Source: Chara braunii (lineage: Eukaryota; Plantae; Charophyceae). Taken from it: a DNA stretch of 64,000 bases. Location of the stretch: NCBI GenBank assembly GCA_003427395.1, contig BFEA01000003.1, positions 8,637,554 to 8,701,553 of the forward strand, read 5' to 3'. A program made the position numbers and the translations under genes. The notes beneath the pieces were generated by a model. That model ran no database searches, was not told the origin of the DNA, and was given only the letters and a program-made list of their open reading frames with translations. Shown piece after piece: positions 3,928 through 60,846 of this stretch. The stretch's first letter is position 1, and each line of letters begins with the position of its first letter.

Positions 3928-4068
3928 TTTTTTTTTTTTTTTTTTTTTTTGCAAAAACACCCCCTCCGGTGTTAGTGCTGCTGATAAGAGCAGACACCAC
4001 TACCACCAGGAGGGAGGCTCCATCTATTGGTGGGGAGCATCACCTGCTGGAAAGCAGGTCCAGCGTCC
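3928..4068 (-). mobile_element. Poly(A)-tailed retroposon 3' module, copy 1 (double pseudoknot plus hairpin)
   Basis: Core 4017-4068, hairpin ~3970-4005, T-run 3928-3950. Confidence 0.8.
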
Positions 4069-4374
4069 TGTGTGTGGCTTTCTGTCAACGTGTGACTTGT
4101 GTGCTTCTGCAAAGTTGTACCAATTATCATTACATTATTACATCATCATTACATCAGGATCAGGGAGCACAACTTTTTTTTTTTCTTTTTTTTCAATGAA
4201 TTGTGTCTCAGATGGGGACTGCATAGCGTAAAGGCCACATGGGGGAATAATATGGGAAGCTCAGCAGAGATGGGTCAGTCAGTTAGAGAATCAATCAGGT
4301 CTGTTGGCTCACAATGGCTTCTGGCACGGACTAGATCTGCTGCCTGGTCATGCACAGGGGGGTGGCATGCGGAT

Positions 4375-17418: not shown

Positions 17419-20400
17419 GAACACCTGTCTGTTTGCTAGTGGTGCTGATACGAGCAGACACCACTAGCACCCATGTAGGGCTCCATCTATTGGTGGGGAG
17501 CTGCACCTGCTGGAAATTGGGTCGAGCATCCCTATACAAATGATGAAAATATGTCTGCTGGAAATCAGGTCCAGCGTCCTTGTGCCATGGTGTGAATGTG
17601 TGTGCTGGAAAACGAGTCCAGCGTCCCTATCGATCTGATCTATAGAACCTCGCAAACAAAATGAGACATCAATCCTATCAGGCGAAACCCTAATCATGAT
17701 GTAATGTGTATTACACTACTGTGATTTGTATCTGCTGGAAATCGGGTCCAGCATCCCTATACCATGTGATGCATCTATATCCAACAGGCAGAAACTAATG
17801 ACCTTTGTGCAATGATAAGATATCGAAGAAGCAATACACTCCATCCTGTACATGTACTTACGTAACCTGTATCTTGAAAAAGAACAGAGGCATTGATTAC
17901 TCCCCTACAAAAAGGGAGGATTGACCTCCTGTTCATGAGGTATTGTTCGTAATCGAGGATTACTAGTATTCGGATGTCATCTATGCTGGCAGAATTATCA
18001 TTGTCCATCCCCTGCAAGCGATCTTCAAATTCACCAATAGCAAATCGAGTTGGCGATGCCCTGACCTATCTTCCCCCTTGATTGAAGTTGCAGAAAGCAA
18101 CTCCAATCAGCAATCTCAACAAGGGGGAGCTTCAAACCAACTCCCACCCTATACTATCCAAAGAAGAGGAGATGAACTCAGAGTACACCATCAGTTTGTA
18201 GTTGTTGAGCAGAGGTATTGATTACTTCCCCACGCCACGGAAGAACCACCTCCAGCGCATGAAGTATGAACGCAGCGAGAAATAACGAGAGAATCCTTCA
18301 TGGTTGATCACCTCACCTGACGAACCAAATCAGAACTTGTGCCCCAAATCCCCAACAGGCAATTATGATATACATCACAAAACCTGAGGGGCGAACCACC
18401 CCCTCCTCCATTGAGGTTGCGGATCGGGCAACCCCAATCAACCAAGGGGGCGGGCAGACTCAACTATCCTATCCCAACCCGATGCCAGCCAAGGAGGACC
18501 AAGCGATGGTAGGGTTTGAGGGAGGGGGAAAATATCAATCCATTTCTTCCAACCCCAATCCCATCCCTATCCACCTCAGCCAATCCCCTCCCCTCTCCCC
18601 CCATACAGCTGATAATAGCGGATGCACGCACCTTGCTGCTGAGCATGTCGCTAACTCGATCTCCGCGCACGATCGTTTTTGTTATTGTTGCTGTAGTAGA
18701 TATTATTGTTATTGTTGTTGTTGTTGTTGTTGTTGTTGTTCATTCCATATGTGACTGACCTTCCCAACCCCTTTTGCCACCTAAGATAACCACGGCTTGT
18801 CCTCGGCGGTCAATGTCGGGGGTGATTGCCACCATCCTTGGTCCAATGGGTCCCCCAAAGAGTGGTTGTCTAAGGACCTTTTCTTTTGATTGGGGTTTTC
18901 TGATCTTTTTTGGGGCATGGCCTTTTCCGTGCCTCGATTAAACCGCCAGTACCTTTCCCAGCTATCGGCCGCAGGCCCTGCTCGCCGAGCTTTCGGGGCG
19001 CATCTGGCCGCCGCCGGAGGCGGAGTGCGGCCTCCGTGTTAACCGGCGCTTTTTTTTTTCTTTTTCACTAGCACCCTCGGGGAGGCTCCATCTATTGGTG
19101 GGGAGCAGCACCTGCTGGAAAGCGGGTCCAGCGTCCCTCACATATGGTTGAATTTTGAAATTTGAAAGTCCAGATTTTCAAGCGGGGAAAGGTACAGGTG
19201 GTTTAAGGATGTCCAATAGAGTAGAGGGGGGTGGGGTTTTCTTCCGGGGGGCGCCTCTGGTCCATCTCCTTTTCCCCGTCTTCAGACTCCCTTCCTTTTT
19301 CATAACCCAGAACAGGCCAGATATATTGGAAGCAGAGTCTACTGGGGTGCAGGTTCCGGTCAGATAACAACGATGGCACGGAAAAAGATCAAGATCATAA
19401 GGCCAATTAAGATTAAGGAGATCCCGGTGGCTGACAACATATGTCACGGTAGCAGTCCCCGTCAAAATTCGGCTCCACTCACGAAGCGGAAGAGCGACCA
19501 GCAGAACTCTGAGAGCTGAGTTATATGTTTCGAGTCTTTTTACCATGAACAGGAAGATGTGGTTCACTGTGTAGTAATAAGATATAAGGAAGCTGCAAAA
19601 TACTGGGTCAGAGCAGAGCAGAGCAAAGCAGAGCAGAGCAGAGAATTGGCCCTAGAGATCCACCTTTTCCCATCCCCTCTTCAGGAACACCCCATTAAAC
19701 ACGTCTCCATCCTCTCCACTAACATGCCTGCTGGTTTCCGCAAGCCAGAAAAGGTGTGGTTCAAACTTCGAAACTGTTACGGAACGCAACAGTCTGGGCC
19801 ATATGCAAAGGGAGATGCAGCATCACGCTCACTGACACAAAGAATGCAAGAGAAAAAGGTTTGGGGGTGAAACAAAGACTTCATGGAGCCTAGGTCAGTC
19901 GGTACACCTTTTTTTCTTTTTTTTCTTTTTTTTAAAGAAAACTTTGTACGCGGGAATCCCCACTTAACGAGGTGGTAAGAGTAACCCTGTTAAGTGGGCC
20001 CCGCCGTTGAAGGCTCCACCTATTAGTGGGGAGCTGCACCTGCTGGAAATCGGGTCCAGAGTCCCTATACAATGATCCAATGTGTACACCTAACAACTGT
20101 TGAAATGCAGACCCGATTTCAAATCCACATCATGGAACCAGATGAATGAAACCATATATCGAATTACATGGGGCCGGTCAGCTCAATGACAATATCTCAA
20201 GGGACAAAGGCGGGGGAGGGGGGGGGAACGACTGCATAGAAGCCGAAATTCTCTGCACAAGTTGTGCAAACGGTGAAAGGCCAAAAGTGTTAATCGTAAG
20301 AAGCCCAGATACACATCCGACACTGTGTGCACGGTTTAGTGAGATCTGGTTAGCAAATGGCAAGGTGGTGGGCCCTGGTGGCAGCACGCCAAGGTTCCAA

Positions 20401-20470
20401 AATATCTTTCTTTTTTTTTCTTTTTTTTTTTTTCAAACAGGACATGCTCCAATCTATTTGTGGGGAGCTC
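15463..20470 (-). mobile_element. Head-to-tail array of about six poly(A)-tailed non-autonomous retroposons sharing the pseudoknot 3' module
   Basis: Cores at 15553-15600, 15665-15717, 17480-17533, 19085-19137, 20013-20065 and 20446-20468 (partial), each next to a T-run on the + strand. Confidence 0.7.
16450..16810 (+). pseudogene. LINE ORF2 fragment (post-RT region)
   Basis: SLLGRALTINTSIFSMMWY...YLWDG...IAW, homologous to GRALVINNVILVALWY in the other LINEs. Confidence 0.7.
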
Positions 20471-20899
20471 CATAATATCGAACTGGGAGAACTCAGAAAT
20501 GACAGAGTCATTTAAACAGCCATCAGCAGGACATTCGGGCTCTTTTTTTCTTTTTTTTTTTAAAACAAAAAGTGGATAAAAGTTAAAAAAAACAGGTCAG
20601 CGGCACTAGGGGGGGGGTGAAGTTCAGGCTCCAGTCTGGAGTTTCGGGACTTTTCCCAGGGCCAATCCTAGTCAGGGTGGAGACGCAATGACACAATGGT
20701 ATGGGGGAGGGGTATGGGGTTAACCCTGTCAAGGGAGAATGAGTGCACGGAGGGACGACAGAAAAGTAGGTTGCGAGCCCAGTCCTAATGGATGTACAGG
20801 CCTACGGGGTAGTAGTGGGGGGATCTGCTAGAACTGAGCAAGAACAGATGGCGGGCAGGTGCAGAAGAGAGGGCTGAAGAGAGGCAGATACCCGCCCCC

Positions 20900-31402: not shown

Positions 31403-32517
31403 TGATAGAGTGTCACTAGGTGAAAGTTCCTAGGTCCTGAGGCAGCAGGCCTCCTCATTTGGATGAGGGACATTCATTAGGGGGAGTTTTTTCCAAAAAA
31501 AAAAAAAAAAAAGGTCCCAGGCTAGCGGAGTCTATTCCTCACCCACCCACCCAGCCCAATTTTATGGCACAAGAACCTCAACGCTAGCTTGAGAGGTAAG
31601 ATTTGGCACCACAAGGAAAGGTGAAGAGGTGCGGGGGCAGTTGATGTCGAGAACAGGTGGTTAGAGGAAAGAAGGACAGAAGGAAACAAAACATATATTT
31701 GATTCCCCCAGAATCAACATCCTCTCTTCAGTAGCTTGCAGANNNNNNNNNNNNNNNNNNNNNNNNNNNNNNNNNNNNNNNNNNNNNNNNNNNNNNNNNN
31801 NNNNNNNNNNNNNNNNNNNNNNNNNNNNNNNNNNNNNNNNNNNNNNNNNNNNNNNNNNNNNNNNNNNNNNNNNNNNNNNNNNNNNNNNNNNNNNNNNNNN
31901 NNNNNNNNNNNNNNNNNNNNNNNNNNNNNNNNNNNNNNNNNNNNNNNNNNNNNNNNNNNNNNNNNNNNNNNNNNNNNNNNNNNNNNNNNNNNNNNNNNNN
32001 NNNNNNNNNNNNNNNNNNNNNNNNNNNNNNNNNNNNNNNNNNNNNNNNNNNNNNNNNNNNNNNNNNNNNNNNNNNNNNNNNNNNNNNNNNNNNNNNNNNN
32101 NNNNNNNNNNNNNNNNNNNNNNNNNNNNNNNNNNNNNNNNNNNNNNNNNNNNNNNNNNNNNNNNNNNNNNNNNNNNNNNNNNNNNNNNNNNNNNNNNNNN
32201 NNNNNNNNNNNNNNNNNNNNNNNNNNNNNNNNNNNNNNNNNNNNNNNNNNNNNNNNNNNNNNNNNNNNNNNNNNNNNNNNNNNNNNNNNNNNNNNNNNNN
32301 NNNNNNNNNNNNNNNNNNNNNNNNNNNNNNNNNNNNNNNNNNNNNNNNNNNNNNNNNNNNNNNNNNNNNNNNNNNNNNNNNNNNNNNNNNNNNNNNNNNN
32401 NNNNNNNNNNNNNNNNNNNNNNNNNNNNNNNNNNNNNNNNNNNNNNNNNNNNNNNNNNNNNNNNNNNNNNNNNNNNNNNNNNNNNNNNNNNNNNNNNNNN
32501 NNNNNNNNNNNNNNNNN

Positions 32518-33709: not shown

Positions 33710-36700
33710 ACTGCATAAAGATGTGCTCGATAGTGTCATTCCTTTTTTGCATTGGGAATGCGGCCAAGCATCGGTGGCACCACAGATGCGCTTCCCCCTT
33801 TTGTTTCAAATGTGTATGGTCGATCAGCAAAGCATTTGTCGGCAGACAACGATGGGCAATCTGCAATTGCAATGACGTGATTTTTGCTGGCCTGGTTTTT
33901 GTTCCAATAAACCACTTAATGTTTGAGGAGGGATCGATCCACATTCAGGTGATGGGCCCATCTATCATTAATTCGGTCCCTTTTTTTACCTTTTTTTTAA
34001 CCTGCTATTGGAGGTGATACGAACATTCTCCAATAGCACGCCCCAGTTTATAGATGGTTCCAATCTATTGGTGGGGAGCATCACCTGCTGGAAACTGGGT
34101 CCAGCGTCCCACAGACAAGATCAGAGAAAGTATACCTGGCAGAACAGCATTGATTGCCCTCTCATGAGGGGATTGACTGTCCGCCTCATCAGCAGCCAGG
34201 TCACAGTACTCTCTTGGGTCGAAGCATCCTATACATGGATTTAACAGATAGTGTTTAGGTGGACTAGTTTACCAGTCGTCGTTGCTGTCCCTCGGGCCGT
34301 TTGCCATTGCTATTCCTCTGGGTTGATAGTCAGTTCAGGTATCGGCGTTTGGCGAAGAAAGACCTTAAAATCTTGTTCCTCCTGCAGCACTCGTACTCGA
34401 AACACCTTGAATTTCTCCCGCCACTCAAGGGGATTGCGAGAGCCACGAAGCACCCCCTTTGGCCCGATTGTGAAGTATTCCACCAAAACATCAGATATCC
34501 GCACGATGTGGATCTCCCTTAAGGTGGGGCCATGTTTAAGCACTCTATACCAAGCCAAAGAGATTGCTTCGATAACCGTTTCCAAGTGTTGCTCCGTATG
34601 GTGGCAGTACCTGAGGGTACCTTGCAGTTGGGATGCTGTTTTCCAGTCTTTCCTCCCCTGGTCCCATAGATGCCCAACACGAAATACCCCATTCTTCACC
34701 CACCCCTTCCAGGGGGCTGCTGAACTGTTTAAGATCTGCCCGTAATGGGGGTAATCCACCGGTTACCAAACAGCGGTTGTTGGCACACTTCCTTTCAGCG
34801 CTCCGATGACTGTTTCTAGGGGAGGGGAAGCCCGCGCCTGTTTTTTAGCAATGATGGGCAGAATTCGTCTGCTGCTTGGCCCTCGATTTTGCACGGTATT
34901 GACCAGTAGCGATCATCTAACCATGTAAGCGGGCTAACCTCTGGTGGGGCCGACGGGGCCAGCCGGGCAATGTGTTATAGGGTCAGAATCTGCCAAGGGC
35001 TATCCACAGAGACGATCAGCATCTTCAACCATTTAAGGAGGAGGGCCTGGACTTGTGTTGTGGGATCGATGATGCCCAGGCCCCCCGCCCTTTTCGGTTG
35101 TATGACTGACTCCCACGCTACCCTACTAACGACGTTGGCTCATTCATCTTCTGCTCTTCATAGGAAGGCTGCCACTGTGAATCTAAGCGCTTGAAAAGCA
35201 GTTTTGCTCAAGGGCTAGAGCATCGACTTATACCACAGCGTAGCAAACACTACATTGTTAATGGCCAGCACTCGGGCAAAGATGGAAGTATGCTTGTTTC
35301 GCCAGTCGGATAGCTTAGCTACAAATGGAGTCGAGATCCAATCGTCATTCGAGGGAGGGCGACCCTGGGCAGTCGATGATACCCCTAGAACTCGGACAGG
35401 AGCCTGCAAGGGGAGCCAGTGTATGTTGAGGAAGTCCAGTGGTCGGCCGCCTTGGTAGTGGATCCACTAGCCCTGGGTTTTACTCCCCCAATTCACCACC
35501 ATGTCGCAAACATGGGCAAATTCGTTCGTTAAACATTGAATGTCCATCATGTTCTCTTGTGTGGCATCCACTATGATGGTGGGGTCGTCTGCAAATAACG
35601 AACATATCGGGACCACGTCCTCAGGGATTCGCATAATCTGGATTTTTTTAATGTCCTTATTAACTCGGAGGTTGGTCGATAAGGCTTCCATAATAATGAG
35701 AAAGAGGAAGGGCGCTATAGGGTCGCCCTAGCGTACAGCCATTCCGACTTAATCGGAGGGGTCAGGGTCCTGTTGTTTGCACCCTCGTGGTGACATTGTG
35801 GTGAAGGATACGTATCCACCTACGGAAGACCGGCCCAAAGTTCAATTTTTCCAGACTTTTGTCTAGAAAGAGCCAGTCAACATGATCGTAGGCCTCCTCA
35901 AAATCGATAAAAACAAGGGCTGCATTTTGCTTAGATTGTCGGGACAACTGCAACACCTCATTGACCAGCAAGATATTTTCGTGAATTTGTCTGTGTTGCA
36001 TTAACCCTGCCTATGATGGATGGATCACCGTCTCTAGGACTGGGATCATCTTATTGCCAGGGCCTTAGCCAGCATTTCATAGGTAACGATAAAGAGGGTA
36101 ATGGATCTATAGTTTCGTATATTGAACTTGTCCCTTTTTTTATATGAAAGGGACAATACCCCTCGGCCGACCAACTCCCCCATGTCCCATGTGCACCAAA
36201 CTTCATTATGATATTCCATAAGATCAGGTCTCATACAATCCCACATTGTTTCCCAAAATTCCTTCGGCAAACCATCCAAACCGTTTCTTTTTTCCTCCTC
36301 CATCTGTAGGAGGGTCGTCCATATCTCTTCCTTGGTTAGGGGAGCCTCGAGCCGCTCCTTCTGTTCAAGGGAGAGAGACTTATCAATAGGTTGAAGAAAA
36401 TCCTCAACCTGTTTCCAACGGGTCTCCTCATCAGCAAGAGGAATATGAGTTGCGAAAAGATCCTTAACAAGTCTCAGACAATTTTGACACATCCTGCAGT
36501 TGTGATAGTAGGGTGTGTTTCGGAGCCCTCCGGTCCATACAATACTTTCACCACTTTGCACTTGGCTCTGGCACGGGCAAGGCCGAAAAATTTTGTGTCC
36601 ATTGAACCTTCGGTGGTATAATGAGAGAGTTTACCATGAATTCAAGCACCCTGCCATCGATATTGAGCTTGTTAGAGTAACTGAGTTCTTATTGCCTGAA

Positions 36701-36898: not shown

Positions 36899-37560
36899 TT
36901 TTTTTTTTTTTTTTTTTTAACAATTGCTCCAATCTATTTGTGGGGAGCAGCACGTGCTGGGAACCCGGCCCAACGTCCCTTATAATTGGAATACATTGAT
37001 GGTTAATGAAAATTTGGGATGATTCAGGAATATTTCATGATGATTAAGATAACAAGCTAGAGATTGATGTTGACTACTCAGAATGCTTATCTACTCAGAT
37101 CTCACGTACTACCCTAACCCTAATCTCAGATATTCATACTAACCAGCCAATCTCTACTGAGTGAATATTGATACCAACCAAGCCTCTAACCGGTCTCACA
37201 CCCCAATCTAGCTAGGTTACAGGGCAGCGCCATCCACCCTAGCTCCGACCCTCGTCGACCAAATTGTAGCCTTTGGTCAAGTATTGCAATTGCCTTCCAC
37301 CCTCAACAATCCCAGATCTCTATCCAAGGTCAAGTATTGCAATTGCCTTCCACCCTCAACAATCCCAGATCTCTATCCAAGGTCTCAAGCTCCTTATGAA
37401 GGTTATCGGGCGATGCCCCAACATCGGCCAACGTTGTTCTTGTTTCTACTCAACCTGGGCAAGAACACAATAAGAACTCAATTAGGAAATCAGCTAAACT
37501 AGAATGCAACCTAAGAATTCGGATCTGATAATAGCGGGATCCCGAGCAAACAACCAATCT
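36899..37560 (-). mobile_element. Non-autonomous poly(A) retroposon with the 3' module; body related to 58300-59332
   Basis: Core 36926-36979; 37190-37260 matches the reverse complement of the 58915-58990 repeat; internal 55-bp tandem duplication at 37274-37384. Confidence 0.65.
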
Positions 37561-38721
37561 GATGATGATGATGATGATGATACTTGATGTTGATTGACCG
37601 TCCCTGTCCACCCCTCCTCTTTTCCCCTCTTACCACCCCTCCTTTTTTCCCCTCTTACCACCCCTCCTCTCCCTTGCTACCTCCACTAATCAAAACCACT
37701 CTGTTGTTGAGTGGTTCCTCACAGCCCCAGCAAAAGGAAAGCCTCCCTCTACCCTACTCCCCTCAAAGAAGGTTGTTCCCCCCAAAAACCTACCTCAAGC
37801 TATCTTTATCCTGCTCTACCACCACTAATAGATGATGTTCCGCCTTCCATCTCTCCCAGCCCCAGAGTTAGACAGTCCCCCTTCTCTTCCCTTGTTCCCT
37901 ATAGGCAAAAACTTCCCACCTTGTGTTTCTCCTGCAGGAAAAAAAACTCTCCCCACTCCCTCCCTCCTGCCCTCCACACCGGCAACCTTGTGGGGAGGAT
38001 TTTCACAACCTAAACTATAGAAAAGAACAAGGAAATAAAAATTGAGAAGTTGATGATAATGATGTTGATGATGATGATAATGGTCAATGAAGCTGATGAG
38101 AATGAAGACTTTTTCTCCCCCCCCCCCCCTCCTACTTTTCACGCTGACACTTCACTGCCTCCGCTGAACAGAAGTGCCCTGATCAAGAGCAGTCCTCATC
38201 AGCCCCAACTAGGGTCAGACCCACTCCTCCCATTCTCCCTACAAGGCATATGGTTCCCCCAAAAGTATGCTTCGATCAAACCTTTGCCCCAATCTGCCAC
38301 CGCTGGGATATAATCGCAGCCCCAGATTAGTACACTCCCCAAAGTCTGCCCTCGCTCCCTACAGGGCAATCATCACCTCCCGCCTTGTGATGCCCCTACA
38401 GAGGAAGGTTCTCCCCCAACTTACCATCTCGCCAGAACCAAATCATTAGTTAACGAAGGGAAAGATAGAAAAAGAGGAAATAAAACTCCATGAAGATGAC
38501 AAATGATGATGATGGCAAGAAGTGCCCTAGGATGAAGAGACTAACGAACATGTTAATGAGAAGAAGCAGCGCAGTGATGATGAAGACCCACCGCACCCTG
38601 ATGATGTCAACAATCAACGTGAAGATGCAAGAAGCGCCATGCGAAATGATGGAATTTACGACGAGGATTCGCAGTCAACATCTCTTGATCCAGCCTATAT
38701 TCATTCTGTAATTCATTCTAT

Positions 38722-38851
38722 GGGACGTTGGACCCGTTTTCCAGCAGGTGATGCTCCCCACCAATAGATGGACCTCTCCCCGGGTGCTAGTGGTGTCTGG
38801 TCTTGTTAGCACCACTAGCACTGCAGGGGGTGTGTCAAAAAAAAAAAAAAA
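38722..38851 (+). mobile_element. Retroposon 3' module copy (core, hairpin, poly(A))
   Basis: GGGACGTTGGACCCG...CCAATAGATGG; GTGCTAGTGGTG/CACCACTAGCAC hairpin; A-run 38837-38851. Confidence 0.8.
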
Positions 38852-38879
38852 GGATGAAGTGTTGAGTTATTAGGCAGAT

Positions 38880-41800
38880 TGCAACAGGACCCGCTCTCAC
38901 CTACCAGATGGACGACGGTTGACCCTGGCCATGAAGGTTGGGTCTATGTGGAAGAGAAGGACGTGAACGGGCAACTTTTTGGATGGAAATGGGAAGGTAG
39001 AGGTGAACCAAGATGGGATACGAGACCCCCCAACACGTGGTATCCCCCACAGCTGCCTGGAAAAGGCCCTTCCCCCCCCCCTCCCCACCTCCCCAGGCCA
39101 GAAAGAGAGTGACAAGAAACTGAAATCTCACTGGAAGGAATCTCAATGGAAGGAAAAAGGCCCAGGTGGGACACGTAGTATGGGGCCAGAAGCGAAAGAC
39201 TACCTGGGCGAGATGCACGAGGAGGCAAAAGGGAAGGAAGCGGGAAAAATCTCAGAGAAACAGAGGGAGAAGAAGGAAGGGGTATCTCTTTTAGGGGAGT
39301 CGGCCACGAAACCCCTGAAGGGGATGCCAGAGGGGGGAAAGGAGAAGGGAAAGGGGAAAGGAAAACGAAAGCAGGACGTGAAACAGGAGGGGAAGATGGG
39401 AACGAGTCAAACCGATATCTTTAGTGAAGTCTTCGGACCGACTCCCATGGAAGTGGAGGAAATTCAAGGAGCATCCCCCCCCCACCCACCTCTCCCCCCA
39501 CGGTAGATGAGGTGATGCAGGACGCGGAAGAGAAAAAGGAAATGAAGGAAGGACAGACAGACCAGCAGGCTGAATCCGAAACGGCGGAGGATAGATTAAG
39601 AAACGTATATGAATGGATAATGCACAATTTACACCTTAAATTCCCAGATTTGTCTGAGGAATTATGGGACAATACATTCAGAGAACTCATCCCACTATTG
39701 GAAAACAGTGAGAGCCTCAGACTTGTCTTGGACCAGGGACTTCCACAAAAAATGTGTTGGGAAGAGGTCTGCCACCAAATGTTGAGTATCGTTCTCACAA
39801 GATTCCACCCCCCAACTGCTGCACCGGAAGATACCCCAGAGGAACAAGGAAAGAAAGAAGAAACGGTCGAAGACATGGACGGGATAGGAGGAAGTGAAGG
39901 AGGATCACAGACGAAAGCAGACCCCGGGGGCAGACAAGACTGACTGGAAGGAAAGAAGGGAGGGAAAGAACAGACATTGGAGATATTGGGGAATAAAACA
40001 GCCCCCGGAAAAGAAAAGAAGGAAGAGTGGCAGACCCCCCCNAAANGGAAANAANGAACCCCCCCCCCCCCCCCAACAGGCCCTCCCCCCCCACCCGACC
40101 CTCCGGATGAAGAATTGGTCGGTGGGAGGCAGAAGCTCAGACACGTCCTAGAAAAAGGGCAATGGTTGCAATCACTATCAAAAATAGATGTGATGGCAGT
40201 GCCAGTGCGGAAAAAGGAAGGAAGCTGGAAAATAGGTCTGACAAGTCTACCGCAATCACAAAAGGGGGAGGTCACGTTACACGGGTGGGAACCCAAAGTG
40301 CCACTTTGGCTGTCATCTGGGGAGGAGGCATTCCAAATGGAAATGAAGGAATTTTTGCGTTGCACATACTAACCAGGGGCAATGGCAGTAAAAAAAGCCA
40401 CATATGGCCAACATACTTTGACAGATACATATTTATACGTGTTGTTCGAACCTGGAAAGGAGGCGGGCCTGCGGTGGCTCTCACAAAATGCATTGTTGGA
40501 TCTCCAACTTCAGAAAATCCAGAGCAGCAAAAACTGGCCAGAGGGAGATGTTTGTACAACCCTCCTCAAAATTTTGAAGGAAGAACATCTTCACACAACT
40601 GGCACAAAAGAGGCAAATTGGGACCTGGTGGAGTGGGAGGCATTGGGATAAGGGGATGAAGAGTAAGGGTGGAGAGGAAGAAGACAAGTATGGATTTGAC
40701 AAAGATCTTGTACGGGAAGAATAAGGTATGGGCGCAGACAAAGAGAGAGGCAGACTTAGACCTGCGATCTCTAAATGTGAACGGTTTGGCCACGACCTCC
40801 CCTCAAAAGAAACAGGCCCTATGGGAACAGCTAAGAGGGATAGAAGGGAGGGATTGGCCAGATGTCATATGTGTCCAAGAAACCCACCTTATGGACAAGG
40901 CGGAGCACCACCATGCACACAAGGAGGTATGGCCCTACCAGGCTTTCCGAGCGCATGCCCCAAGACCGGGGAGCGCGAGGGTGGTTATTTGGATTCCTCC
41001 CAACTCAAGGGTTGAACCTGTTCATTGGGAGGAAGACCAGATAGAAGGGAGATGGGTGTCAGTCCTGGTAATGCTGGAGCTGGAGATTATACAAATCTTC
41101 TGTGTGTTTGGACCGAACCAGGCAAGGGCCAGGCGAGCTTTCTTCGAAGCTATCACCATCAGAATCCCAGCTGATGGGATCCCGACCATTTTGGCGGGTG
41201 ATTTCAATGCATCCCCCAACCGCTGGCTTGACAGATGGCGCCTTCCCTCCCCATGCCCAGTCTACGTGGAAACAGATGAGCAGATAATCACAAATCTATG
41301 TACATCATTGGGAATGTACGACCCCTTTCGTAGACAATTTCCGACCAGACAAACCTTTTCATGCTATAGAAAAAATGGAACAGAAAAAGTCACAAGATCA
41401 AGAATCGATTTAATATTAATCTCGTAAGACTCGGAAGGGGCTTTGCAATTGGTGGAAGTGTTCCCACGGAGTGCCTACCCTGAGTTAGACCACACAATGT
41501 ACGTGGTCGTCCTCTCCTTTAGGAAGCGGCCAGACCAGGGTCCTGGATTCTTCAAACTAAATACATCCCTATTAGCAAGGAAAGATTTTCAGAATTTTAT
41601 ACACGACATACGGCAGTATTGGAGAACACACAGAGAAACAATTCAAAATGACATCCTGTGGTTTAACAATGGACTGCCCTTTTTAGCCAGAAAATCTAGT
41701 GAATTCGCTAAAGGGCTGGCTACTCGGCGACTTGCGGAAGAAATGGACCTACACCACCAACTATGTCAACTAAAACAACAGGAAGAGCAAAATGAAAATA

Positions 41801-44800
41801 TGGATACAAGGGAGCTCTCTGAGGCCATCGAGTTAACAGAGGCTCGGTTGTTAGAGTACATGGAACACAGATGGCAGGGAGCACGAATTAGGGAGAAACT
41901 GAGGGGACAATAGACGCCCCATTTTCTCCCTTAGCCAGGATAAGGACGGGCAAAACCACTATAGAGGCGATGTATGACCCGTCACAACCTGGGGGCCCAG
42001 TGACCACGTCTACAGCTGGATGTGTTCGGATAGCAAGAGACTTCTTTAAAGACCTTTTCACATCCAGGTGCAAGGAAAAACCATATGAACAAAGGATGAT
42101 AGAAATAGATGGTTTCTTGAACCCATTGCAAAATAGTCTCTCGGAACAGCAAAAGGAAACACTCGAGTTGCCCTTGTCCAAGGAAGAGGTGTGGTCGGCG
42201 CTTATGCAAATGAAAGAGGAAAAGACCCCCTAAATAGATGGTCTCCCTAAGGAATTTTGGGAGTCCACATGGAGCACCTTAGCACACAATCTGATGGACT
42301 ATTATAACGCAATATGGACCACGGGCCAGATGAGTGAGTTCGTGGGACATAGCATTTTGACCCTGCTATATAAAAGGGGCATCAAATGAACATTAGAAAC
42401 TACAGACCAAGCACCCTCTTAACTGTGGTCTATAAATTGGTAACAAAGGCTCTGGCAAACCGCCTGGGGGAGGTGATGGGAGATATTACCCACCCAGCAC
42501 AGACTGGCTTCATCAAAGGGCGAAAAATCCAACACAACATTTTGTTGGTTAACGAGGTCATTAAAGTATCAAGACAATCTAAATATAATGCTGCCATCAT
42601 TTTTGTGAATTTTGAAAAGACATATGATAATGTTGACGAGACCTTTTTGGACAAATGTCTGGAAAAGATGAATTTTGGCCCGGCCTTCAGGAGATGGGTA
42701 TAAATCCTGCATCAGAATGCCACAACGACCGTCTGAATCAATGGTAGACCGACCCCTGCCATATACCTAGAACGGTCAGTGAGGCAAGGAGACCCCATCG
42801 CCCCTTTCCTTTTTGTCATAATAATGGAGGCCCTGACTGCAAACTTAAGAGTCCACAAACTTGCACAAAGACATCTGAAAGATAAGGCTCACCTCTATCC
42901 CAGAGGATGCTATCCCCGTCTGCTCTCTCTTTGCAAACGATCTTACCATAATGATCGATGCATCTCACAAAAATATGCTAGAAATCCAAAAACTGATGAA
43001 TCAGTTCTGCTCCCTTTCAGATATGACGGTAAACTGGGGAAACAAGACACAAGGGTGGTGGTTAAACTACCAAGGAGGGAGACCACCAGACACTACCAAA
43101 ACAAAATGGATACCCACAGAAGCACCGACCAGAATCTTTGGGGTCCAAATGACAGCAAAAGGGAAACCACCCTTGAATGATGAATGACTCATACAACCAG
43201 TCCTGGGGAAACTATCCCAATGGAAGGACCGTCAGACTTCCTTAATGGGTAGGGCCCTAGTAATCAATAACGTAATCTTGGTTGCCCTTTGGTATAAAAC
43301 AACAATCTGGACACTCAGCAAACCTGCGACATCTTCCCTCCAAAGACAGGTGGCAGTTTTTTTATGGAGAAGGAATCATGAATGTCCAAATGCTATCAGT
43401 AGAGTGGCCTGGAAGTCGGTTATACAGCCAAAAACCAAAGGAAGGCTAGGGATAATTGACCCGACCACTCAAGTGATGGCCCTGGCTCTCCAATGGGTAA
43501 AAGGTTTTTTCTTCTCCACACTCGCGCCATGGCAACCATTGCAGCAGATTGCTAGGCTAGCGCCACCTGCGCCCCCAGAGGTCGAACCAGAAACATGGCT
43601 TGAAGATAGATACTAGGCTATACCTCAAAAGTCTACTCCGTCCAATGGGGAAAAAGTATCGGATAGACAAGACTTGAAAAGAGACCCTCTCTGGGCCACG
43701 ATACTGAGGACATGGCGCAAGCTGCCCCTACCCGACAAAATCTCACCCAAACGGTGGGAAGAAGTGGTCCGTCAACCACTGTTCGGAAGCCGATGGCTGA
43801 CTGGCCCCCAAAGCCGAGTCTTCCGGAGCACTGAAAATCCTTGGAAAAGTTGGGTTAAGAATGACGTACTGAGGGTCAAGGATATTTGGGAAAAGGAAAC
43901 CAAAGACTGGTTGTCGGAACCCCAACTAAGAAGGAAATTGAGGTACTGTCATTATGTGGGAGAAGCATTGGAAAACATTATCTTCTCTATCCCACTTGAC
44001 TGGGTCCGAATCCTGAAAAAAGGACCGATGATACTGCAGGGAGATTGGGTAGGGTTCTGGGATACTGAGGGGGTGGTTGGAAACGTAGTGTACACCCGCA
44101 AGGTTGGCATGAGGGCAGAACAGGAAGTGGTGGCCAACCGTTTCATAATAAATGCAGATAATTTTCTGGAACGGATACTGCCAGAAGAGACAGCATGGTA
44201 CCCGACATCCGATATTTACCGTATTTGTGTCCTTACAGAGAAAGGCCGGTGGCAAGCATACAAACCAAACAAACCAATCCAAGAACTGCCTTTAGACCCA
44301 AACGAATGAATACGGACCCAGCAATTTGGAAGGGGGAAGTCTGGGACACGGCAATTTCAGACGCTTTCAGTCAAGGCAACTTACAGAATGTTGTGACCGA
44401 AAGTAAACCTGAAAGATGTCGTCGAGGCGCGCTGGATGAAACATCTAAACATGGGGAGAGACATGTTGCGACCTGTCAAATGGTTCAAAGCAAGGAAAGT
44501 TATGCCCGCGAAGCTAGCCTCACTCCAGTGGCAAGTGGAACATAGGGCATTGTCGGCCGATGACTGGCTGATAGACAAGACGCGCCTTGAACAAAAGGGA
44601 CCGACGCTCCCATGGTGCAAGCTATGCACAACATCCTTCCCGTCTCGAAAATGACCGGAGACCATAGAGCATATGTTTCTGCAATGCCCGACGGCGATAT
44701 GGTTATGGAGATGGTGGGACCGAATATGGAGACAACTGGGTACCTCACGACCCTGCCCATGGGACTAGAGAACGCTCCTCTACGAGGCATGGGCCCCACA

Positions 44801-45717
44801 GCGAACCACCTCCTTCGAAGACAATATGTTTAAAATAGCACGCTGGGCGGTTATCTGGGCCATCTGGCGGAGACGATGCACACTTGAAATAGAAGGGGTG
44901 AACCGAGACGGTACGAAGTTTATCAATGCAATAAAAGAACAAATACAAAATGACATCTCTATCCAATGGAAAAGACTCAAAGAAAAGATTACGCATCTGC
45001 ACTCGCAACAGGAAATTAAACCACGGGTCCCCCCGCCACCGAAAACCCCTAGTCCCTGTGAGTTAGGGTCGGGTTGTACGGAGGGGCGGCGATCGTACAG
45101 AGGCGTCGGGTTGTACAGAGGCCGACGGATCCAATCCCGCCATTTTGCAAGCGGCAACTTTGCCGATTTTTTGTGCTCAGAAGAAGCCATGAAAATATCT
45201 GAAAATTTGAGGGTCCATAGATTAGGTCGTGATCTTTCAAGGGAAAATACCAGGAAAAAAAAAAATCATTTTGACGGTGAAATATTCTTTGCGCCGATTC
45301 GGTTTATTTCCATTTTTTGTCGCAAATTTTGTACGGAGGCCCGCCCGGTTTTCCACGCTGTACGGCCGGTACCCGTCGTGAAACGGCGCTACCGGTACCC
45401 CGAGGTTTTTGACGTCAGGGGGACCTGTGGCAAGCATACAACATATTGTGAGGTTCTGCAAAGACTGGCTGGGTGGAGACCAAGGGGGTTGGATTGCAAA
45501 GGTAACATGGAAAGGAGGGGGGAAGGGGGGGGAAGACGTAGAAGAAGGGGAAAGAGACTACCACCTCTGCTTTCAGGACTGGACAAAGATTGATCCCTCT
45601 ATCCCACACCGACCCCTCTCCGATTTTGTTGAATTCTTCCCGCCCCTGCCCCTAGCTTTGGTTGAGATGGAATGGTACCAGGGCATGGCCAATTAAATAG
45701 TACAAAAAAATAAAAAG
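38880..45717 (+). mobile_element. Decayed L1/Tx1-type LINE (LINE C): ORF1 remnant 38880-40651, ORF2 40690-45696
   Basis: APE motifs (NVNGL, QETH, GDFN), RT motifs (NYRP, RQGDP), Zn finger; C-terminus homologous to LINE A; A-rich end. Confidence 0.9.
45021..45430. mobile_element. ~410-bp TIR DNA element (MITE-like) inserted in LINE C ORF2
   Basis: ~29-bp imperfect TIR CCAC(G/A)GGTCCCCC...AAAACC; internal TTGTAC(G/A)GAGG repeats; LINE homology resumes after it; TSD not clean. Confidence 0.75.
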
Positions 45718-45933
45718 ACTGATCTTAAAATATCAGTGGCCCAAGCAAGGAAAGGTGGGGAGGTAGGTAGCAGGGGTAATGGAAGCCACATTGCGAAGGC
45801 ATACCCAGACAACCCCCGGAGCATCAGGGCAATCATTGCAATCATTGCAGACAACTTTGAGGCAGTCAAGAGCTCAGCCAATCCCCGGAGCACTAGAACA
45901 ATCAATATTGGAAGACCACACAGTTCTTGCTCC

Positions 45934-45936
<3 letters not shown>

Positions 45937-46022
<86 letters not shown>

Positions 46023-46147
46023 NNNNNNNNNNNNNNNNNNNNNNNNNNNNNNNNNNNNNNNNNNNNNNNNNNNNNNNNNNNNNNNNNNNNNNNNNNNNNN
46101 NNNNNNNNNNNNNNNNNNNNNNNNNNNNNNNNNNNNNNNNNNNNNNN

Positions 46148-46215
<68 letters not shown>
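45937..46215. repeat. (GA)n microsatellite spanning an N-gap
   Basis: Direct reading of the sequence. Confidence 0.95.
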
Positions 46216-46218
<3 letters not shown>

Positions 46219-46357
46219 CTCTCCAGCAGATGGATTTTTGCACAATCCTGGTTTTCCCATCTAACAACTGCTCAGTTAACCCCTCAATCTCACTGGGGCA
46301 GTCAATGCTGGCAGCCAGATTCTTACTTACTTTCTGATGCTTAGCAGCTGTTCAAAT

Positions 46358-46499
46358 GGGACGCTGGACCCGTTTTCCAGCAGGTGCGGCTCCCCACCAA
46401 TAGACTGGAGCAACCGGATCGCGCACTAGGGGAGGTTGCTCGTATCACCTTCCCTACAGACGATGGTCTGGCTTAAAAAAAAAAAAAAAAAAAAAAAAA
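46358..46499 (+). mobile_element. Retroposon 3' module copy (core, alternative hairpin, poly(A))
   Basis: Near-consensus core 46358-46411; hairpin 46427-46456 with loop CTCGTAT; A-run 46475-46499. Confidence 0.85.
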
Positions 46500-58269: not shown

Positions 58270-59897
58270 CATGGTTTTAGAGATGGTAGAATCCTGACAG
58301 ATGTCTGCAAAGCCAATGTGTTTCGGGCTCTTGGTTTGCCGATGCTAGAACGACGCTGGCTGGTGCTGGGGCGTTAGCCCTGTGACCTGTTGGTAGCAGG
58401 AGCGTGAGGCCTGGTAGAGAGATCTAGAGATTAGTAGAGGGAGGAAGGCAATCCAGTGGCGAACTGGGGGGAGTCAGCCTTGACAACCTAAAGGGCAGGG
58501 TATAGTCTTGGTGGCAAGATCACATCAGCTGTGACTGGCATTGGTTAGGAAAGTATTGTCTCTGGGGTTGTGTGTTTGGTATAAGGGATGACTAGGTTTG
58601 CTAAAAAAAATAAGAATCCCATAGTTAAATGATAGTTTTCAATCATGTTATATTAATTTACCGCCGCCAGTATAGAGGGATATCACAGGGCTTTTCAAAA
58701 AAAAAAAAAAAAAAAAACTTTCTCTTAGCAATCCATCTTAGGCGGTTTCGATGCTGTTATACCCAGTGATCTGCGGCTGTTCGATACCAGAACGACGCTG
58801 GCCGGTGCTGGGGTGTTGCCCTGTAACCTGCTGATGCAGGAGCGTGAGGCCTGGTAGAGAGATCTGGGATGCTTTGGGGTGGGCATCCCAAGGGATGACC
58901 AAGGGTTGCTGCTGGGATGACGCTGGTCGGAGCTGGGGCGAGTTGTGTTGCCCTGTAACCCAGCAGGGTGGGGGCGTGAGGCCTGGAAGACCTCAGCAGG
59001 GAGTAAGACGGTGTTGGGAAGTCTTAGAAGGGTTTGTTAGGGAACCTGAGGGTTGTGAGCATTCGTAGGACCTCTGTGGCAGGTTATTGCATGAGTAGTT
59101 CCCTAATAGGTCATTAGACACTCTTTATTCTCCCCATGTTTCTGAATCACATCGTGTTCATAGATTGTTCTCAGCCGAAGCCGGGTAATGGCCCCAGTAT
59201 CTGAAATGATCTCAAACGATCACAAATGTTCTCAATGATCTGTACAATTCGATATGGGACGCTGGGCCCAGTTCCCAGCACGTGCTGCTCCCAATGAAAA
59301 GACTGGAGCATTTGTTTAAAAAAAAAAAAAAAGCTTTCTGGTGTTCTGAAATTTAAAATTTTTGGCAGCATCTGGCCTTCTTCCTCAGTCAGGATATAGG
59401 ATTTCAGAGATGGTCAAACCTGGACTGATGTCTATAGAGTTGCTTTGTTCTGTGCCCCTGGTTTGCCGATGCCAGAACGACGCTGGCCGGAGCTGGGGCG
59501 TTGCCCTTTAACCTGCAAATGGCAGGAGTGTAAGGCCTTGTAGAGAGATCTGGGGTTTGCTGAGGGAGGAAGGCAATCCAGTGGCAAACTGGGTGGGCTG
59601 CCTTGACAACCTATGGGGCCAGGGATAGTCTAGGTGGCGAGATGAGGTCGGCTATGGTTGATGTTGATAAGGTTGGTATTGTCTCTGAGTTGCAATGTCC
59701 TGGTACAGGGAGTGCTAGGAGTTGTTCTAGAATTAGGAGACCAGAATTGCTGATATAGCATAGTCTTCTATAAGTTTTGTATACACTAATCATTATCATC
59801 ATTAGTATGATTATCTCACATTTCACATAGAATCAGCAGGAGTTCATCATCATCATCATCATCATATGAGGGACGCTGAGCCCGGTTCTCAGCAAGT
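58270..59897 (+). mobile_element. Two head-to-tail non-autonomous retroposon units with internal ~85-bp repeats; 3' modules at 59256-59332 and 59870-59897 (partial)
   Basis: ACGACGCTGG...GCCCTGTAACC...GTGAGGCCTGG repeated at ~58340, 58780, 58915 and 59465; 59170-59330 matches the reverse complement of 15640-15780. Confidence 0.6.
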
Positions 59898-59921
59898 TCG
59901 GTTCTGTCACTCCGGGTAGAC

Positions 59922-60846
59922 TGTGAGGACCCCGGCCTCAATTTCCTTATTGGTAATATATATATAAAAACAAAAAAGGATTTCACACAGCTAGGCACCA
60001 GAAGTCTCGGTCCCAAGGACCCAATCAGTCCCGGTCTCAGGCTGTCCCAAAGGATAGGTCTTAGGGTTCGTAGGCCAAAGCATCGCAGGTCGGTAGGAGT
60101 CGACAAGTGGGCCGCTATATCTTCGGGATCAGTAAGCAGCTCCTCCTCATTTGCAGTGTGCAAGGATTGGTGACATACTGCTGGAGCCAAGCGCTGGACT
60201 TGGAGCGCTGCCTGGAGGAAGGAGAGCAGCTGGGCGCTCAGCCTGGCTATGGCAAGCAGCCCGGCCTGAGGAGGAGGAAGAAGGGGCCGAAGGAGGAGAG
60301 TGGCGAGGTACCAACCTGGCTATGGTGGACACCGTCTTCATCACCTTGATAGGCGCTGCATCTGGAAGGCCCTAGTTGGGGTAGTGCTACACCAAGGAAG
60401 CTCGAGGCAGAGTCAGGCATGGCGGACTGATGAGCAACGACATAGCTGCTTTGTGTTGTGCTTTGCACAAGAGGGCAGAGCCCCTGGTAGTCCGTCATAG
60501 CCTTGGTATGTGAGAGGAAAAAGAAGGGGGAAGCCATGGCTATGGTGGACCTATTGTTGTGCGGGTAGTAAGAGGGAACTTCGAATATTGATTCGGGTTC
60601 ATCCACTCATTGTTATTATTATTATTCGGAAGAAGAATAAGATTGGCAAAGTCAAGGAGGAGGAGCAAGGTGGAGAGAGAAGGGGAATTTGTCATTGGTC
60701 TTGCTCGTGTACATCTTCTTCTTCTTCTTCTTCTTTCTCTCTTCTTTGGTCTCTATCTCTTTGCAAGTGCTTTCATTTCTTTCGCAATTGGGTGGCATTG
60801 TCTTTCATTGTGAATTTGCACTTTGGGAATGACCAGGATCGTAACA
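59922..60846 (+). mobile_element. Probable solo LTR related to element 1
   Basis: TGTGAGGACCC...CAGGATCGTAACA, colinear with the element 1 LTR; no PBS and no matching TSD. Confidence 0.7.

What the first reader, a model, noticed from the sequence alone, without database searches (positions are those of the whole stretch)
46358..46411. Conserved tandem double-pseudoknot RNA module capping many unrelated poly(A) retroposons
Seen: the consensus GGG-AC-GCTGGA-CCC-GNTT-TCCAGC-A-GGTG-NN-GCTCC-C-CACC-AATAGAT-GGAGC occurs at 4017, 15553, 15665, 17480, 19085, 20013, 20446 (partial), 34057 and 36926 on the minus strand, and at 38722, 46358, 59256 and 59870 (partial) on the plus strand. All but 59870 point toward a nearby poly(A). 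It folds as two adjacent H-type pseudoknots: PK1 GGG/CCC plus GCTGGA/TCCAGC, and PK2 GGTG/CACC plus GCTCC/GGAGC, both with a 2-nt L1 and joined by one A. Compensatory changes are visible: CAGG/CCTG (4017) and AGG/CCT (17555) for GGG/CCC; GCTGGG/CCCAGC (59256) and GCTGAG/CTCAGC (59870); CGTG/CACG (15665); G-U variants at 20013, 36926 and 38722. Some copies carry mismatches. Established: stacked small pseudoknots occur in tobamovirus 3' UTRs, and stringent LINE RTs recognise 3' RNA structures. Inference: this is a shared RT-recognition, stability or translation element for a retroposon network. I do not recognise it as a described family.
Basis: partly seen in the sequence, partly recalled or inferred. 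Interest (0 to 1): 0.9.

Follow-up and report, generated by a model that had tools for sequence, protein, structure and literature searches.

The report
Shared RNA tail of Chara retroposons
A 54-letter RNA module, probably folded into two small pseudoknots, sits just before the poly(A) tail of many L1-like jumping genes and their 7SL-like parasites in the alga Chara braunii; it most likely marks these RNAs as templates for the elements' reverse transcriptase, a known kind of signal in a form not yet described.

Summary
The window is Chara braunii-like DNA (best RT hit 67% identical). It carries 11 full copies of the ~54-nt module, 3 first-half-only copies, 1 second-half-only copy and 1 diverged variant, all pointing at an A-rich tail. 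Across 264 kb of Chara sequence I found 25 full copies. They are 86% identical to each other on average, while their flanks are at random level (25-29%).

The carriers are not arbitrary retroposons. They are diverged L1-like LINE families (APE + RT + zinc-binding C-terminus; one 7.6-kb copy with a target-site duplication ends in the reported module), 5'-truncated LINE tails, and SINEs with a 7SL-like head.

DNA contigs pile >1000-fold deeper on the module than on its flanks. Oligo-dT RNA reads cover it, mostly in sense.

Both hairpin stems are solid. The two loop-to-flank helices that make the pseudoknots are 95.6% paired with a few compensatory changes, which is suggestive but not proven.

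Best reading (0.55): a stringent-type recognition signal for the LINE reverse transcriptase, hijacked by SINEs. It has no Rfam match and I found no description in the papers searched. This scan already noted and followed up the same module in other windows of this genome. It is a new variant of a known kind.

The parts
46356..46411 (+). The reported module: PK1 (GGG-AC-GCTGGA-CCC-GTTT-TCCAGC), an A linker, then PK2 (GGTG-CG-GCTCC-C-CACC-AATAGACT-GGAGC). It lies at the 3' end of LINE#1.
   Evidence: (77.1 bits, E 2.5e-16)
38873..46499 (+). LINE#1, an L1-like element, frameshifted. It has ORF1-like parts, APE 40660-41424, RT 42374-43177, and a C-terminal zinc-binding region running to about 45669 that is interrupted by an insert at 45017-45445. 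A 3' UTR of about 800 nt follows, then the module, an accessory hairpin and poly(A). It is flanked by a 9-nt direct repeat, GAGTTATTA.
46262..46315 (+). Upstream 3'-UTR block (CTGCTCAGT.AA - short covarying hairpin - CAGTCAATGCTG). About 6 of 15 copies examined share it.
   Evidence: moderate depth excess
46427..46456 (+). Accessory hairpin between the module and poly(A), with a conserved loop (GCTCGTATCA-like) on family-specific stems.
46475..46499 (+). poly(A) tail of LINE#1
38720..38774 (+). Full module, followed by a long accessory hairpin and A15.
59254..59309 (+). Full module of the short-tail class (GCTGGG/CCCAGC; CGTG with a decayed partner), 8 nt before A15. It ends the SINE at 58724-59332.
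58724..59332 (+). SINE-like element: two 7SL Alu-domain-like head units (58782-58868, 58918-58997), a body, the module, and poly(A). A CTTTCT repeat flanks it.
59868..59930 (+). Diverged variant. PK1 has GCTGAG/CTCAGC. The second half is replaced by a different stem with a 12-nt loop that keeps TAGA. It belongs to a second SINE subfamily (head at 59467-59554).
4017..4071 (-). Full module with (C)AGG/CCT(G) in place of GGG/CCC.
15553..15602 (-). Module lacking the GGTG-NN segment.
15665..15720 (-). Full module, short-tail class, with CGTG/CACG.
17480..17534 (-). Full module. Three PK1-only units lie before it in the same 3' UTR.
17553..17759 (-). Array of three PK1-only units (17553-17582 with AGG/CCT, 17602-17629 with GGG/CTC, 17727-17759).
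19085..19139 (-). Full module with a truncated accessory hairpin and an A-rich tail.
20013..20067 (-). Full module (CACT gives a G-U pair; the first stem base is T).
20446..20472 (-). 5'-truncated copy: PK2 part only, then poly(A).
34057..34112 (-). Full module inside a tail fragment of about 230 nt that is inserted into the ORF2 of another LINE (36884 to 33690, minus strand).
36926..36981 (-). Full module, short-tail class. It ends a SINE whose 7SL-like head lies at 37350-37446.

Best explanation
The module is the conserved terminal element of the 3' UTR of several diverged L1-like LINE families of Chara braunii. Non-autonomous SINEs with a 7SL-like head have copied it.

In the RNA it forms two hairpins. 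Each hairpin's loop probably pairs with the 3-4 nt lying two bases upstream of its stem, which gives two adjacent H-type pseudoknots joined by one A.

It most likely acts as a stringent-type template signal. The LINE ORF2 protein binds this fold next to the poly(A) tail. The poly(A) anneals to the T-rich nicked target, and target-primed reverse transcription starts. Only RNAs that carry the module are copied efficiently, which is why SINEs and 5'-truncated copies all keep it.

Shown: presence, copy number, position, conservation, sharing between LINEs and SINEs, the hairpin stems, and sense-strand presence in poly(A)+ RNA.
Inferred: the two pseudoknot helices, and binding by the reverse transcriptase.
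For: 1. Eight independent LINE 3' ends run ORF2 C-terminus, then a 0.5-1 kb UTR, then the module, then poly(A). They are the window's LINE#1, L005, L004, L007 (two), L001, L003 and L002.
2. Their ORF2 C-termini are only 30-55% identical in protein, and their UTRs do not align. The module is 86% identical on average, against 25-29% in the flanks.
3. SINEs with a 7SL-like head end in the same module.
4. SINE-borne modules in the sample have no run of four T, while some LINE-borne ones have TTTT in the PK1 loop. This fits use inside Pol III transcripts.
5. Variation in the 25 copies is greatest at the second L3 base of PK1 and the two L1 bases of PK2 (major-base share 40-60%). The reads listing adds the optional extra L3 base of PK2 and the first stem base (46363). 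All other columns are at least 70% conserved, so nearly the whole module is constrained, single-stranded parts included.
6. Structure: the full model is 97% paired against 26-52% for slid partners. The pseudoknot helices alone are 95.6% paired, with two-sided changes at 3 pairs (8 of 500 shuffles reach this). The nested consensus leaves exactly the complementary segments free.
7. More than 10,000 DNA contigs per run lie on the module. Oligo-dT RNA reads lie on it about 3:1 in the sense direction.
8. Precedents: stringent L1-clade tails in plants and green algae (PMC3747384), and a pseudoknotted 3'-UTR element bound by the R2 protein to start TPRT (PMC12222951).
Against: - There is no binding or retrotransposition assay.
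- The distance to poly(A) falls into two classes, 6-25 nt and 58-81 nt, so the signal is not at a fixed distance from the priming site.
- First-half units also occur as arrays further upstream in the UTR. That fits a multi-site RNA-binding protein such as ORF1p at least as well.
- Other poly(A) retroposons in the window, including a fairly intact related LINE (26968-31512), lack the module.
- The pseudoknot helices rest on few independent compensatory events among related copies.
- The GGG/CCC helix has only 3 bp.
- Two further Chara loci (74 kb) hold almost no copies, so the density is uneven.
Confidence: 0.55

Rival explanations
1. The module is an RNA 3'-end or stability element. It helps define or protect the 3' end of the element's transcript, either as a polyadenylation enhancer (near-upstream-element-like AAUAGA) or as a compact fold that blocks 3'-to-5' decay. 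It would not be read by the reverse transcriptase.
For: - It always lies close to poly(A).
- In the short-tail class, AATAGA sits about 15-20 nt before the A-tail, a suitable distance for an AAUAAA-like signal.
- A loose TGTA motif is common just upstream.
- The module is abundant in oligo-dT RNA.
- An earlier follow-up in this scan (s1-543698) favoured 3'-end formation.
Against: - In most copies AATAGA is 65-90 nt from the tail, too far for a near-upstream element.
- The module is kept in SINEs with a 7SL-like head, which are presumably Pol III transcripts with encoded A-tails.
- AATAGA lies inside the predicted loop 3 of PK2.
- Related LINEs with other tails manage without it.
Confidence: 0.2
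2. The module is a packaging or translation element. It would bind ORF1p for RNP assembly, or a host factor such as eEF1A as the tobamovirus upstream pseudoknot domain does, rather than ORF2p.
For: - PK1-like units are repeated 1-3 times upstream in several LINE 3' UTRs (L005, L004, window 17553-17759), as expected for multi-site binding.
- The tandem small pseudoknots resemble the viral domain (own knowledge).
Against: - SINEs encode no protein and still keep the full module.
- Only the terminal unit carries PK2, and only that unit is universally present.
- There is no sequence similarity to viral elements (viral scan 0 hits; Rfam none).
Confidence: 0.1
3. Structural rival, independent of function: the module is just two ordinary hairpins with sequence-conserved loops and flanks that a protein reads. 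The GGG/CCC and GGTG/CACC complementarities do not pair.
For: - The nested consensus is the two hairpins.
- Complementarity of 3 and 4 nt between a loop and a nearby flank is only mildly improbable by chance.
- The compensatory events in these helices are few (A-U twice at pair 3-16; C-G in one subfamily at pair 28-43; A-U once at 29-42).
- Some of those are CpG-decay transitions.
- 5 of 35 copies break pair 3-16.
Against: - All subfamily-level stem differences seen are compensated (A-U to G-C at 13-21 together with G-C to C-G at 28-43 in the short-tail class).
- All three C-to-T changes at column 16 and all three at column 43 keep pairing.
- Slid-partner controls give 35-56% pairing against 95.6%.
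- Loop lengths (2 nt over a 5-6 bp stem; 4 and 7 nt over 3-4 bp) fit H-type geometry (established knowledge).
- The two bases predicted to cross the deep groove of PK2 are the most variable places in the module.
Confidence: 0.35
4. The module has no function. It is simply a young common tail spread by recombination or template switching between families, and is conserved only because it is recent.
For: - Tails are clearly exchanged: the same 7SL-like head is joined to at least three different tails.
Against: - Variation concentrates at a few loop positions and is not spread evenly.
- The flanks directly adjoining the module are at random-level identity.
- The carriers include LINE families with 30-55% protein identity.
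Confidence: 0.05

Closest known systems
Stringent-type LINE 3' tails shared with partner SINEs (eel UnaL2 / zebrafish ZfL2 stem-loops; the conserved 3' hairpin of one monocot L1 lineage with ZmSINE2/3; Chlamydomonas L1-1_CR with SINEX-3_CR). Sources: PMC3747384, PMC4176376
   Same: - A short structured RNA lies just upstream of the terminal repeat or poly(A).
- It is far more conserved than the rest of the element.
- It is shared by LINE and SINE.
- The carriers are L1-like, end in poly(A), and come from the green lineage.
   Different: - Here the element is about 54 nt with two hairpins and probable pseudoknots, not a single stem-loop.
- Many deeply diverged LINE families share it.
- First-half units are repeated in the UTR.
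- A second, loop-conserved hairpin often lies between it and poly(A).
- There is no functional assay.
Pseudoknotted 3'-UTR element of avian R2 (R2Tg), bound by the R2 protein to start TPRT (PMC12222951)
   Same: - A small pseudoknotted RNA in the last tens of nt of a non-LTR retrotransposon 3' UTR.
[quoted passage not shown]
   Different: - R2 is a site-specific, restriction-like-endonuclease element without poly(A) priming.
- It has one pseudoknot with base triples, solved by cryo-EM.
- There is no sequence similarity.
- In Chara both the fold and the binding are only inferred.
Tobamovirus upstream pseudoknot domain and tymovirus 3' pseudoknots (own knowledge, not tested here)
   Same: - Consecutive small H-type pseudoknots with 3-6 bp stems and 1-4 nt loops near an RNA 3' end.
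   Different: - Those occur in viral genomic RNA without poly(A), and bind eEF1A or act in translation and replication.
- No sequence or Rfam similarity was found, and no hit in viral contigs.
Alu/B1 with L1: 7SL-derived SINEs mobilised by an L1 (PMC7245038, PMC13023118)
   Same: - The SINEs that carry the module have a head resembling the 7SL Alu domain, sometimes as two units, and end in poly(A).
   Different: - Mammalian L1 is relaxed: Alu needs only poly(A) and SRP9/14 binding.
- The Chara SINEs additionally carry the LINE's structured tail.
- The 7SL similarity is below the Rfam threshold (27 bits against 70).

Membership tests
Stringent-type LINE/SINE 3' recognition tail | Lies at the 3' end of an autonomous LINE, just upstream of its terminal repeat or poly(A). 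| tested here: met
   Eight LINE 3' ends show ORF2 C-terminus, UTR, module, poly(A). The distance to poly(A) is 6-81 nt.
Stringent-type LINE/SINE 3' recognition tail | Much more conserved than the rest of the element across diverged lineages. | tested here: met
   The module is 86% identical on average, against 25-29% in the flanks. ORF2 C-termini are 30-55% identical in protein. UTRs are unalignable.
Stringent-type LINE/SINE 3' recognition tail | The same tail is present on non-autonomous partner elements. | tested here: met
   SINEs with a 7SL-like head at 58724-59332, at 36919-37446(-) and at L007 18301-18858(-) end in the module.
Stringent-type LINE/SINE 3' recognition tail | The tail is required for retrotransposition and is bound by the LINE ORF2 protein. 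| not testable with these tools
   This needs a retrotransposition or binding assay.
H-type pseudoknot (two in tandem) | A hairpin stem supported by covariation. | tested here: met
   PK1 stem: two-sided changes at pairs 8-26, 12-22 and 13-21 (A-U 25, G-C 10), 98% paired. PK2 stem: 97% paired, but its two-sided changes come only from diverged rows fitted by the model, so it rests on conservation plus the replaced stem of the variant.
H-type pseudoknot (two in tandem) | Loop bases pair with the strand 5' of the stem, supported by covariation. | tested here: inconclusive
   95.6% paired. Pair 3-16 has A-U twice and G-U once, but is unpaired in 5 copies. Pair 28-43 has C-G three times (one subfamily) and G-U three times. 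Pair 29-42 has A-U once. Shuffles reach the observed count in 8 of 500, and slid partners give 0-2 pairs. The independent events are few.
H-type pseudoknot (two in tandem) | Loop lengths sterically able to cross the grooves. | tested here: met
   L1 is 2 nt over 6- and 5-bp stems. L3 is 4 nt over 3 bp and 7-8 nt over 4 bp. L2 is 0 and 1 nt. This is read from the alignment and judged against established pseudoknot geometry.
H-type pseudoknot (two in tandem) | Experimental evidence of the tertiary fold. | not testable with these tools
   This needs SHAPE/DMS with compensatory mutants, or a solved structure.
L1-clade LINE (plant type) | APE endonuclease, then reverse transcriptase, then a C-terminal zinc-binding domain (zf-RVT); an ORF1 upstream; a poly(A) end. 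| tested here: met
   Exo_endo_phos and RVT_1 are above cut-off. zf-RVT is weak here (19-22 bits against a cut-off of 27.5), but is on record in a related metagenome LINE. ORF1-like ORFs have no Pfam match. Poly(A) ends are present.
L1-clade LINE (plant type) | Phylogenetic placement of the RT inside the L1 clade. | not tested
   Only nearest hits were seen: Chara, Closterium, a plant 'reverse transcriptase zinc-binding domain' protein, and one sea anemone protein.
Any Rfam 15 family (including tRNA-like, viral pseudoknot, ribozyme and ENE families) | Covariance-model match. | tested here: not met
   There were 0 matches at gathering score in the window. At E up to 10 on 46250-46500 there was only a chance RNase P fragment.

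The most novel reading that the evidence does not exclude
A tandem double pseudoknot is the common 'licence plate' read by the reverse transcriptases of many deeply diverged L1-like lineages of a streptophyte alga, and SINEs derived independently from 7SL RNA have copied it.

This would be the first pseudoknotted template-recognition element in the L1 clade. It would also be direct support for the idea that the ancestral green-lineage L1 was of the stringent type. It offers a compact RNA (about 54 nt) with a protein partner, suitable for structural work.
Probability: 0.3. Interest if true: 0.75.

Novelty: new variant of a known kind. Interest (0 to 1): 0.6.

Why it matters
Mammalian L1 copies almost any polyadenylated RNA. 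Whether the ancestral L1 of the green lineage needed a specific 3' structure is an open proposal (PMC3747384).

Chara gives a clear case. One 54-nt structured module is kept at about 86% identity on LINE families whose proteins have drifted to 30-55% identity, and SINEs have borrowed it. Judging by the number of contigs, it is present in at least ten thousand places.

If it is the reverse-transcriptase signal, it defines who can be mobilised in this 2-Gb genome. It would also be a small, well-defined RNA-protein pair for mechanistic or structural study.

It is also a practical marker for annotating Chara retroposon 3' ends.

Tried and rejected
- **Rfam:** gathering search on the whole window and E-value search on the module gave nothing.
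- **tRNA scan of the window:** none found, so no tRNA-type SINE heads were detected.
- **Pattern scans:** of the metagenome collection, only two contigs of BFBZ01 matched. This is the sister accession of the Chara assembly, so there is no evidence outside Chara. Viral contigs gave 0 hits.
- **Model search elsewhere:** with filters off, the covariance model found nothing on a Closterium LINE locus or on three metagenome LINE contigs. This is only 30 kb, so it is weak evidence of absence.
- **More Chara DNA:** two further Chara loci (L010, L011; 74 kb) added no full copy, so the sample stayed at 25.
- **ORF1-like protein search:** no homologues. ORF1-like ORFs have no Pfam match.
- **Alignment problem:** MAFFT put the last stem arm out of register in copies with the extra loop base. 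I therefore built the model from the 15 gap-free copies and used the model-made alignment. The pseudoknot helices were not part of that model, so their counts are not fitted to it.
- **Single-sequence fold:** the minimum-energy fold of the reported copy pairs GGGA with UCCC through the variable NN bases. I rejected it because it depends on bases that vary among copies.
- **Second pseudoknot in the 59868 variant:** I found no convincing loop-flank pairing.
- **ENE-type triple-helix element:** I considered it and dropped it on inspection, because there are no paired U-rich internal loops.

Full report
**What is there**

BLAST, nhmmer and a covariance model recover all the listed places and a few more. 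The window holds:
- 11 full copies;
- three copies of the first half only (17553-17759, minus strand);
- one 5'-truncated copy with the second half only (20446-20472);
- one diverged variant (59868-59930).

Each faces an A-rich tail, including the variant, which has a weak one. Rfam has no match at gathering score, and none of note at E up to 10.

**Where the window comes from**

The best protein hit of an RT ORF in the window is a Chara braunii protein at 67% identity, followed by Closterium proteins. Loci fetched from the C. braunii assembly GCA_003427395.1 carry the same module. Across 264 kb (the window plus 12 loci fetched before that search) there are 25 full copies and about 12 partial ones. 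The density is uneven: two loci totalling 74 kb have practically none.

I laid public runs of the same species on 46262-46500.
- 10,532 and 13,725 DNA contigs match the module.
- Summed depth on the module is more than 1000-fold that of the flanks.
- The flanks of those contigs are heterogeneous.

The module is therefore in at least about ten thousand places in the genome.

**What carries it**

tblastn with the window's own LINE segments shows the same order in eight independent cases: an L1-like ORF2 (APE, RT, and a C-terminal region with weak zf-RVT similarity), then a 0.5-1 kb 3' UTR, the module, usually an accessory hairpin, and poly(A).

The reported copy ends LINE#1 of the window (38873-46499). 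This element is frameshifted and is flanked by a 9-nt direct repeat.

Some other copies are 5'-truncated tails. One is a 230-nt fragment inserted into the ORF2 of another LINE.

A third class is SINE-like:
- The element at 58724-59332 has two head units that resemble the Alu domain of 7SL RNA (Rfam Metazoa_SRP, 27 bits, E 7.5e-5, below threshold).
- The head recurs at seven places.
- It is joined to the module, to the diverged variant, or to a tail without the module.

So 'unrelated retroposons' is true at DNA level, but they form one LINE/SINE network.

Not all poly(A) elements have the module. A fairly intact related LINE (26968-31512) and several other retroposons end differently.

**Conservation**

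| Measure | Value |
|---|---|
| Mean pairwise identity of the 25 full modules | 86% (range 71-98%) |
| Ungapped identity of the 55 nt on either side | 25-29%, i.e. random |
| ORF2 C-termini of the carrier LINEs, protein identity | 30-55% |

Variation is concentrated at the second base of the GNTT loop and the two bases between GGTG and GCTCC. This holds in my sample, and these places are among the five module positions the reads listing printed; that listing omitted 78 further rows. The listing adds one optional extra base before the last arm and the first stem base (46363). Everything else is held, including the single-stranded AC, the joining A and AATAGA.

**Structure**

RNAalifold on 15 gap-free copies gives two hairpins (GCTGGA/TCCAGC and GCTCC/GGAGC). 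It leaves GGG, the loop CCC, GGTG and the loop CACC unpaired.

On the 37-row alignment the four-helix model does as follows:
- It is 97% paired, against 26-52% when the partners are slid.
- The first hairpin has two-sided changes at three pairs.
- The second hairpin's two-sided changes come only from diverged rows fitted by the model, so it rests mainly on conservation.

The two pseudoknot helices were not part of the search model. Taken alone they behave as follows:
- They are 95.6% paired.
- They show two-sided changes at three pairs (8 of 500 shuffles reach this; slid partners give 0-2).

The concrete events behind those numbers:
- AGG/CCT appears in two copies at different positions of their elements.
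- CGTG/CACG characterises the short-tail subfamily.
- CATG/CATG appears in one copy.
- All six C-to-T changes on the 3' sides keep G-U pairs.

Against the helices: five copies break the outer GGG/CCC pair, the events are few, the copies are related, and some changes are CpG transitions.

I rate the two hairpins as established, the second pseudoknot as likely, and the first as plausible. Loop lengths fit H-type geometry (established knowledge).

**Expression**

In two oligo-dT RNA-seq runs, 3,333 and 7,190 reads lie on the module. They are about 3:1 with the first mate on the minus strand, which in the usual stranded libraries means sense RNA. This shows presence in poly(A)+ RNA. It does not show autonomous transcription.

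**Mechanism**

I commit to a stringent-type template signal for the LINE reverse transcriptase, at 0.55. The reasons are the position, the extreme conservation across diverged LINE lineages, and the copying of the module by SINEs.

The SINE-borne copies in the sample have no run of four T, which some LINE-borne copies have in the first loop. This fits Pol III transcription, and argues against a purely Pol II 3'-end role.

Precedents:
- Stringent tails of L1-clade elements in plants and green algae (PMC3747384).
- The pseudoknotted R2 3'-UTR element bound by its protein to start TPRT (PMC12222951).

Head-to-tail trains and a tail-to-tail pair show insertion into earlier A-tails, as expected for an L1-type endonuclease. 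This last point is an inference.

Rivals:
- A 3'-end or stability role (0.2). AATAGA is well placed as a poly(A) signal only in the short-tail class.
- An ORF1p or host-factor site (0.1). The upstream arrays of first-half units favour this.
- Hitch-hiking without function (0.05).
- Independently of function, the hairpins-only structure keeps about 0.35.

**Known or new**

The kind of element is known. This fold and sequence have no Rfam match, and I found nothing in four literature searches. I could not consult Repbase or Dfam.

This scan has already noted the same module in many other windows of this genome. Two earlier follow-ups reached similar readings. I treated those as leads and tested the points above myself.

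Noticed in passing
window 58782-58868, 58918-58997, 58340-58425, 59467-59554, 37350-37446(-); L007 18522-18858(-), 21073-21160; L005 33931-34018: A repeated SINE head resembles the Alu domain of 7SL/SRP RNA (Rfam Metazoa_SRP, 27.2 bits, E 7.5e-5, below gathering 70). It is sometimes present as two tandem units. It is joined to at least three different tails. According to PMC13023118 and PMC7245038, 7SL-derived SINEs are known only from supraprimates and hagfish, so a charophyte case would be a further independent origin.
   Followed up: partly
window 46427-46456 and the equivalent places after 4017, 17480, 38774, 34057, 15553, 20013: An accessory hairpin lies between the module and poly(A). 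It has a conserved loop (GCTCGTATCA-like) on at least three unrelated stems. It is absent in the short-tail (SINE) class.
   Followed up: partly
window 46262-46315, 34140-34200(-); L005 11815-11865; L003 170-220(-); L007 about 13190-13240: A second conserved 3'-UTR block lies 50-95 nt upstream of the module in a subset of LINEs. It has two TCAAT-containing motifs around a short hairpin whose stem covaries (CCCTG/CAGGG, CCCTC/GAGGG, CCCC/GGGG).
   Followed up: partly
window 17553-17759(-); L005 11453-11792; L004 10744-11020; L007 13493, 18367-18420(-): One to three copies of the first half alone (PK1 unit) lie 50-450 nt upstream of the full module within the same 3' UTR.
   Followed up: partly
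window 26968-31512 (+): A fairly intact related LINE (APE, RT, zinc-binding C-terminus, A18 tail) has a 95-nt 3' UTR without the module. Two copies of another repeat (ending at 20982-21003 and 21300-21321, minus strand), and the elements ending at 58697 and at 1-28, also have poly(A) but other tails. Several tail types therefore coexist.
   Followed up: partly
window 15463-20470, 38851/38873, 58717/58724; L002 405-450: Elements lie head-to-tail, and once tail-to-tail, with new copies starting within a few bases of an older A-tail. This suggests preferential insertion into A/T tracts.
   Followed up: partly
type C and variant modules (59254, 36926, 15665; L004 6596; 59868; L007 21511) compared with the LINE-borne modules: SINE-borne modules have GTTCCC or GTTCTC in the first loop/stem junction, with at most two T in a row. 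Some LINE-borne ones have TTTT. The paired A-U to G-C change removes a possible Pol III terminator.
   Followed up: partly
window 45017-45445: An insert of about 430 bp with a short A11 run interrupts the ORF2 C-terminal region of LINE#1.
   Followed up: no
L007 5039-5092 (-): A sub-threshold type III hammerhead ribozyme match (41.6 bits against gathering 48.5) lies in a Chara locus. Other notes of the scan mention hammerheads in pseudo-LTRs.
   Followed up: no
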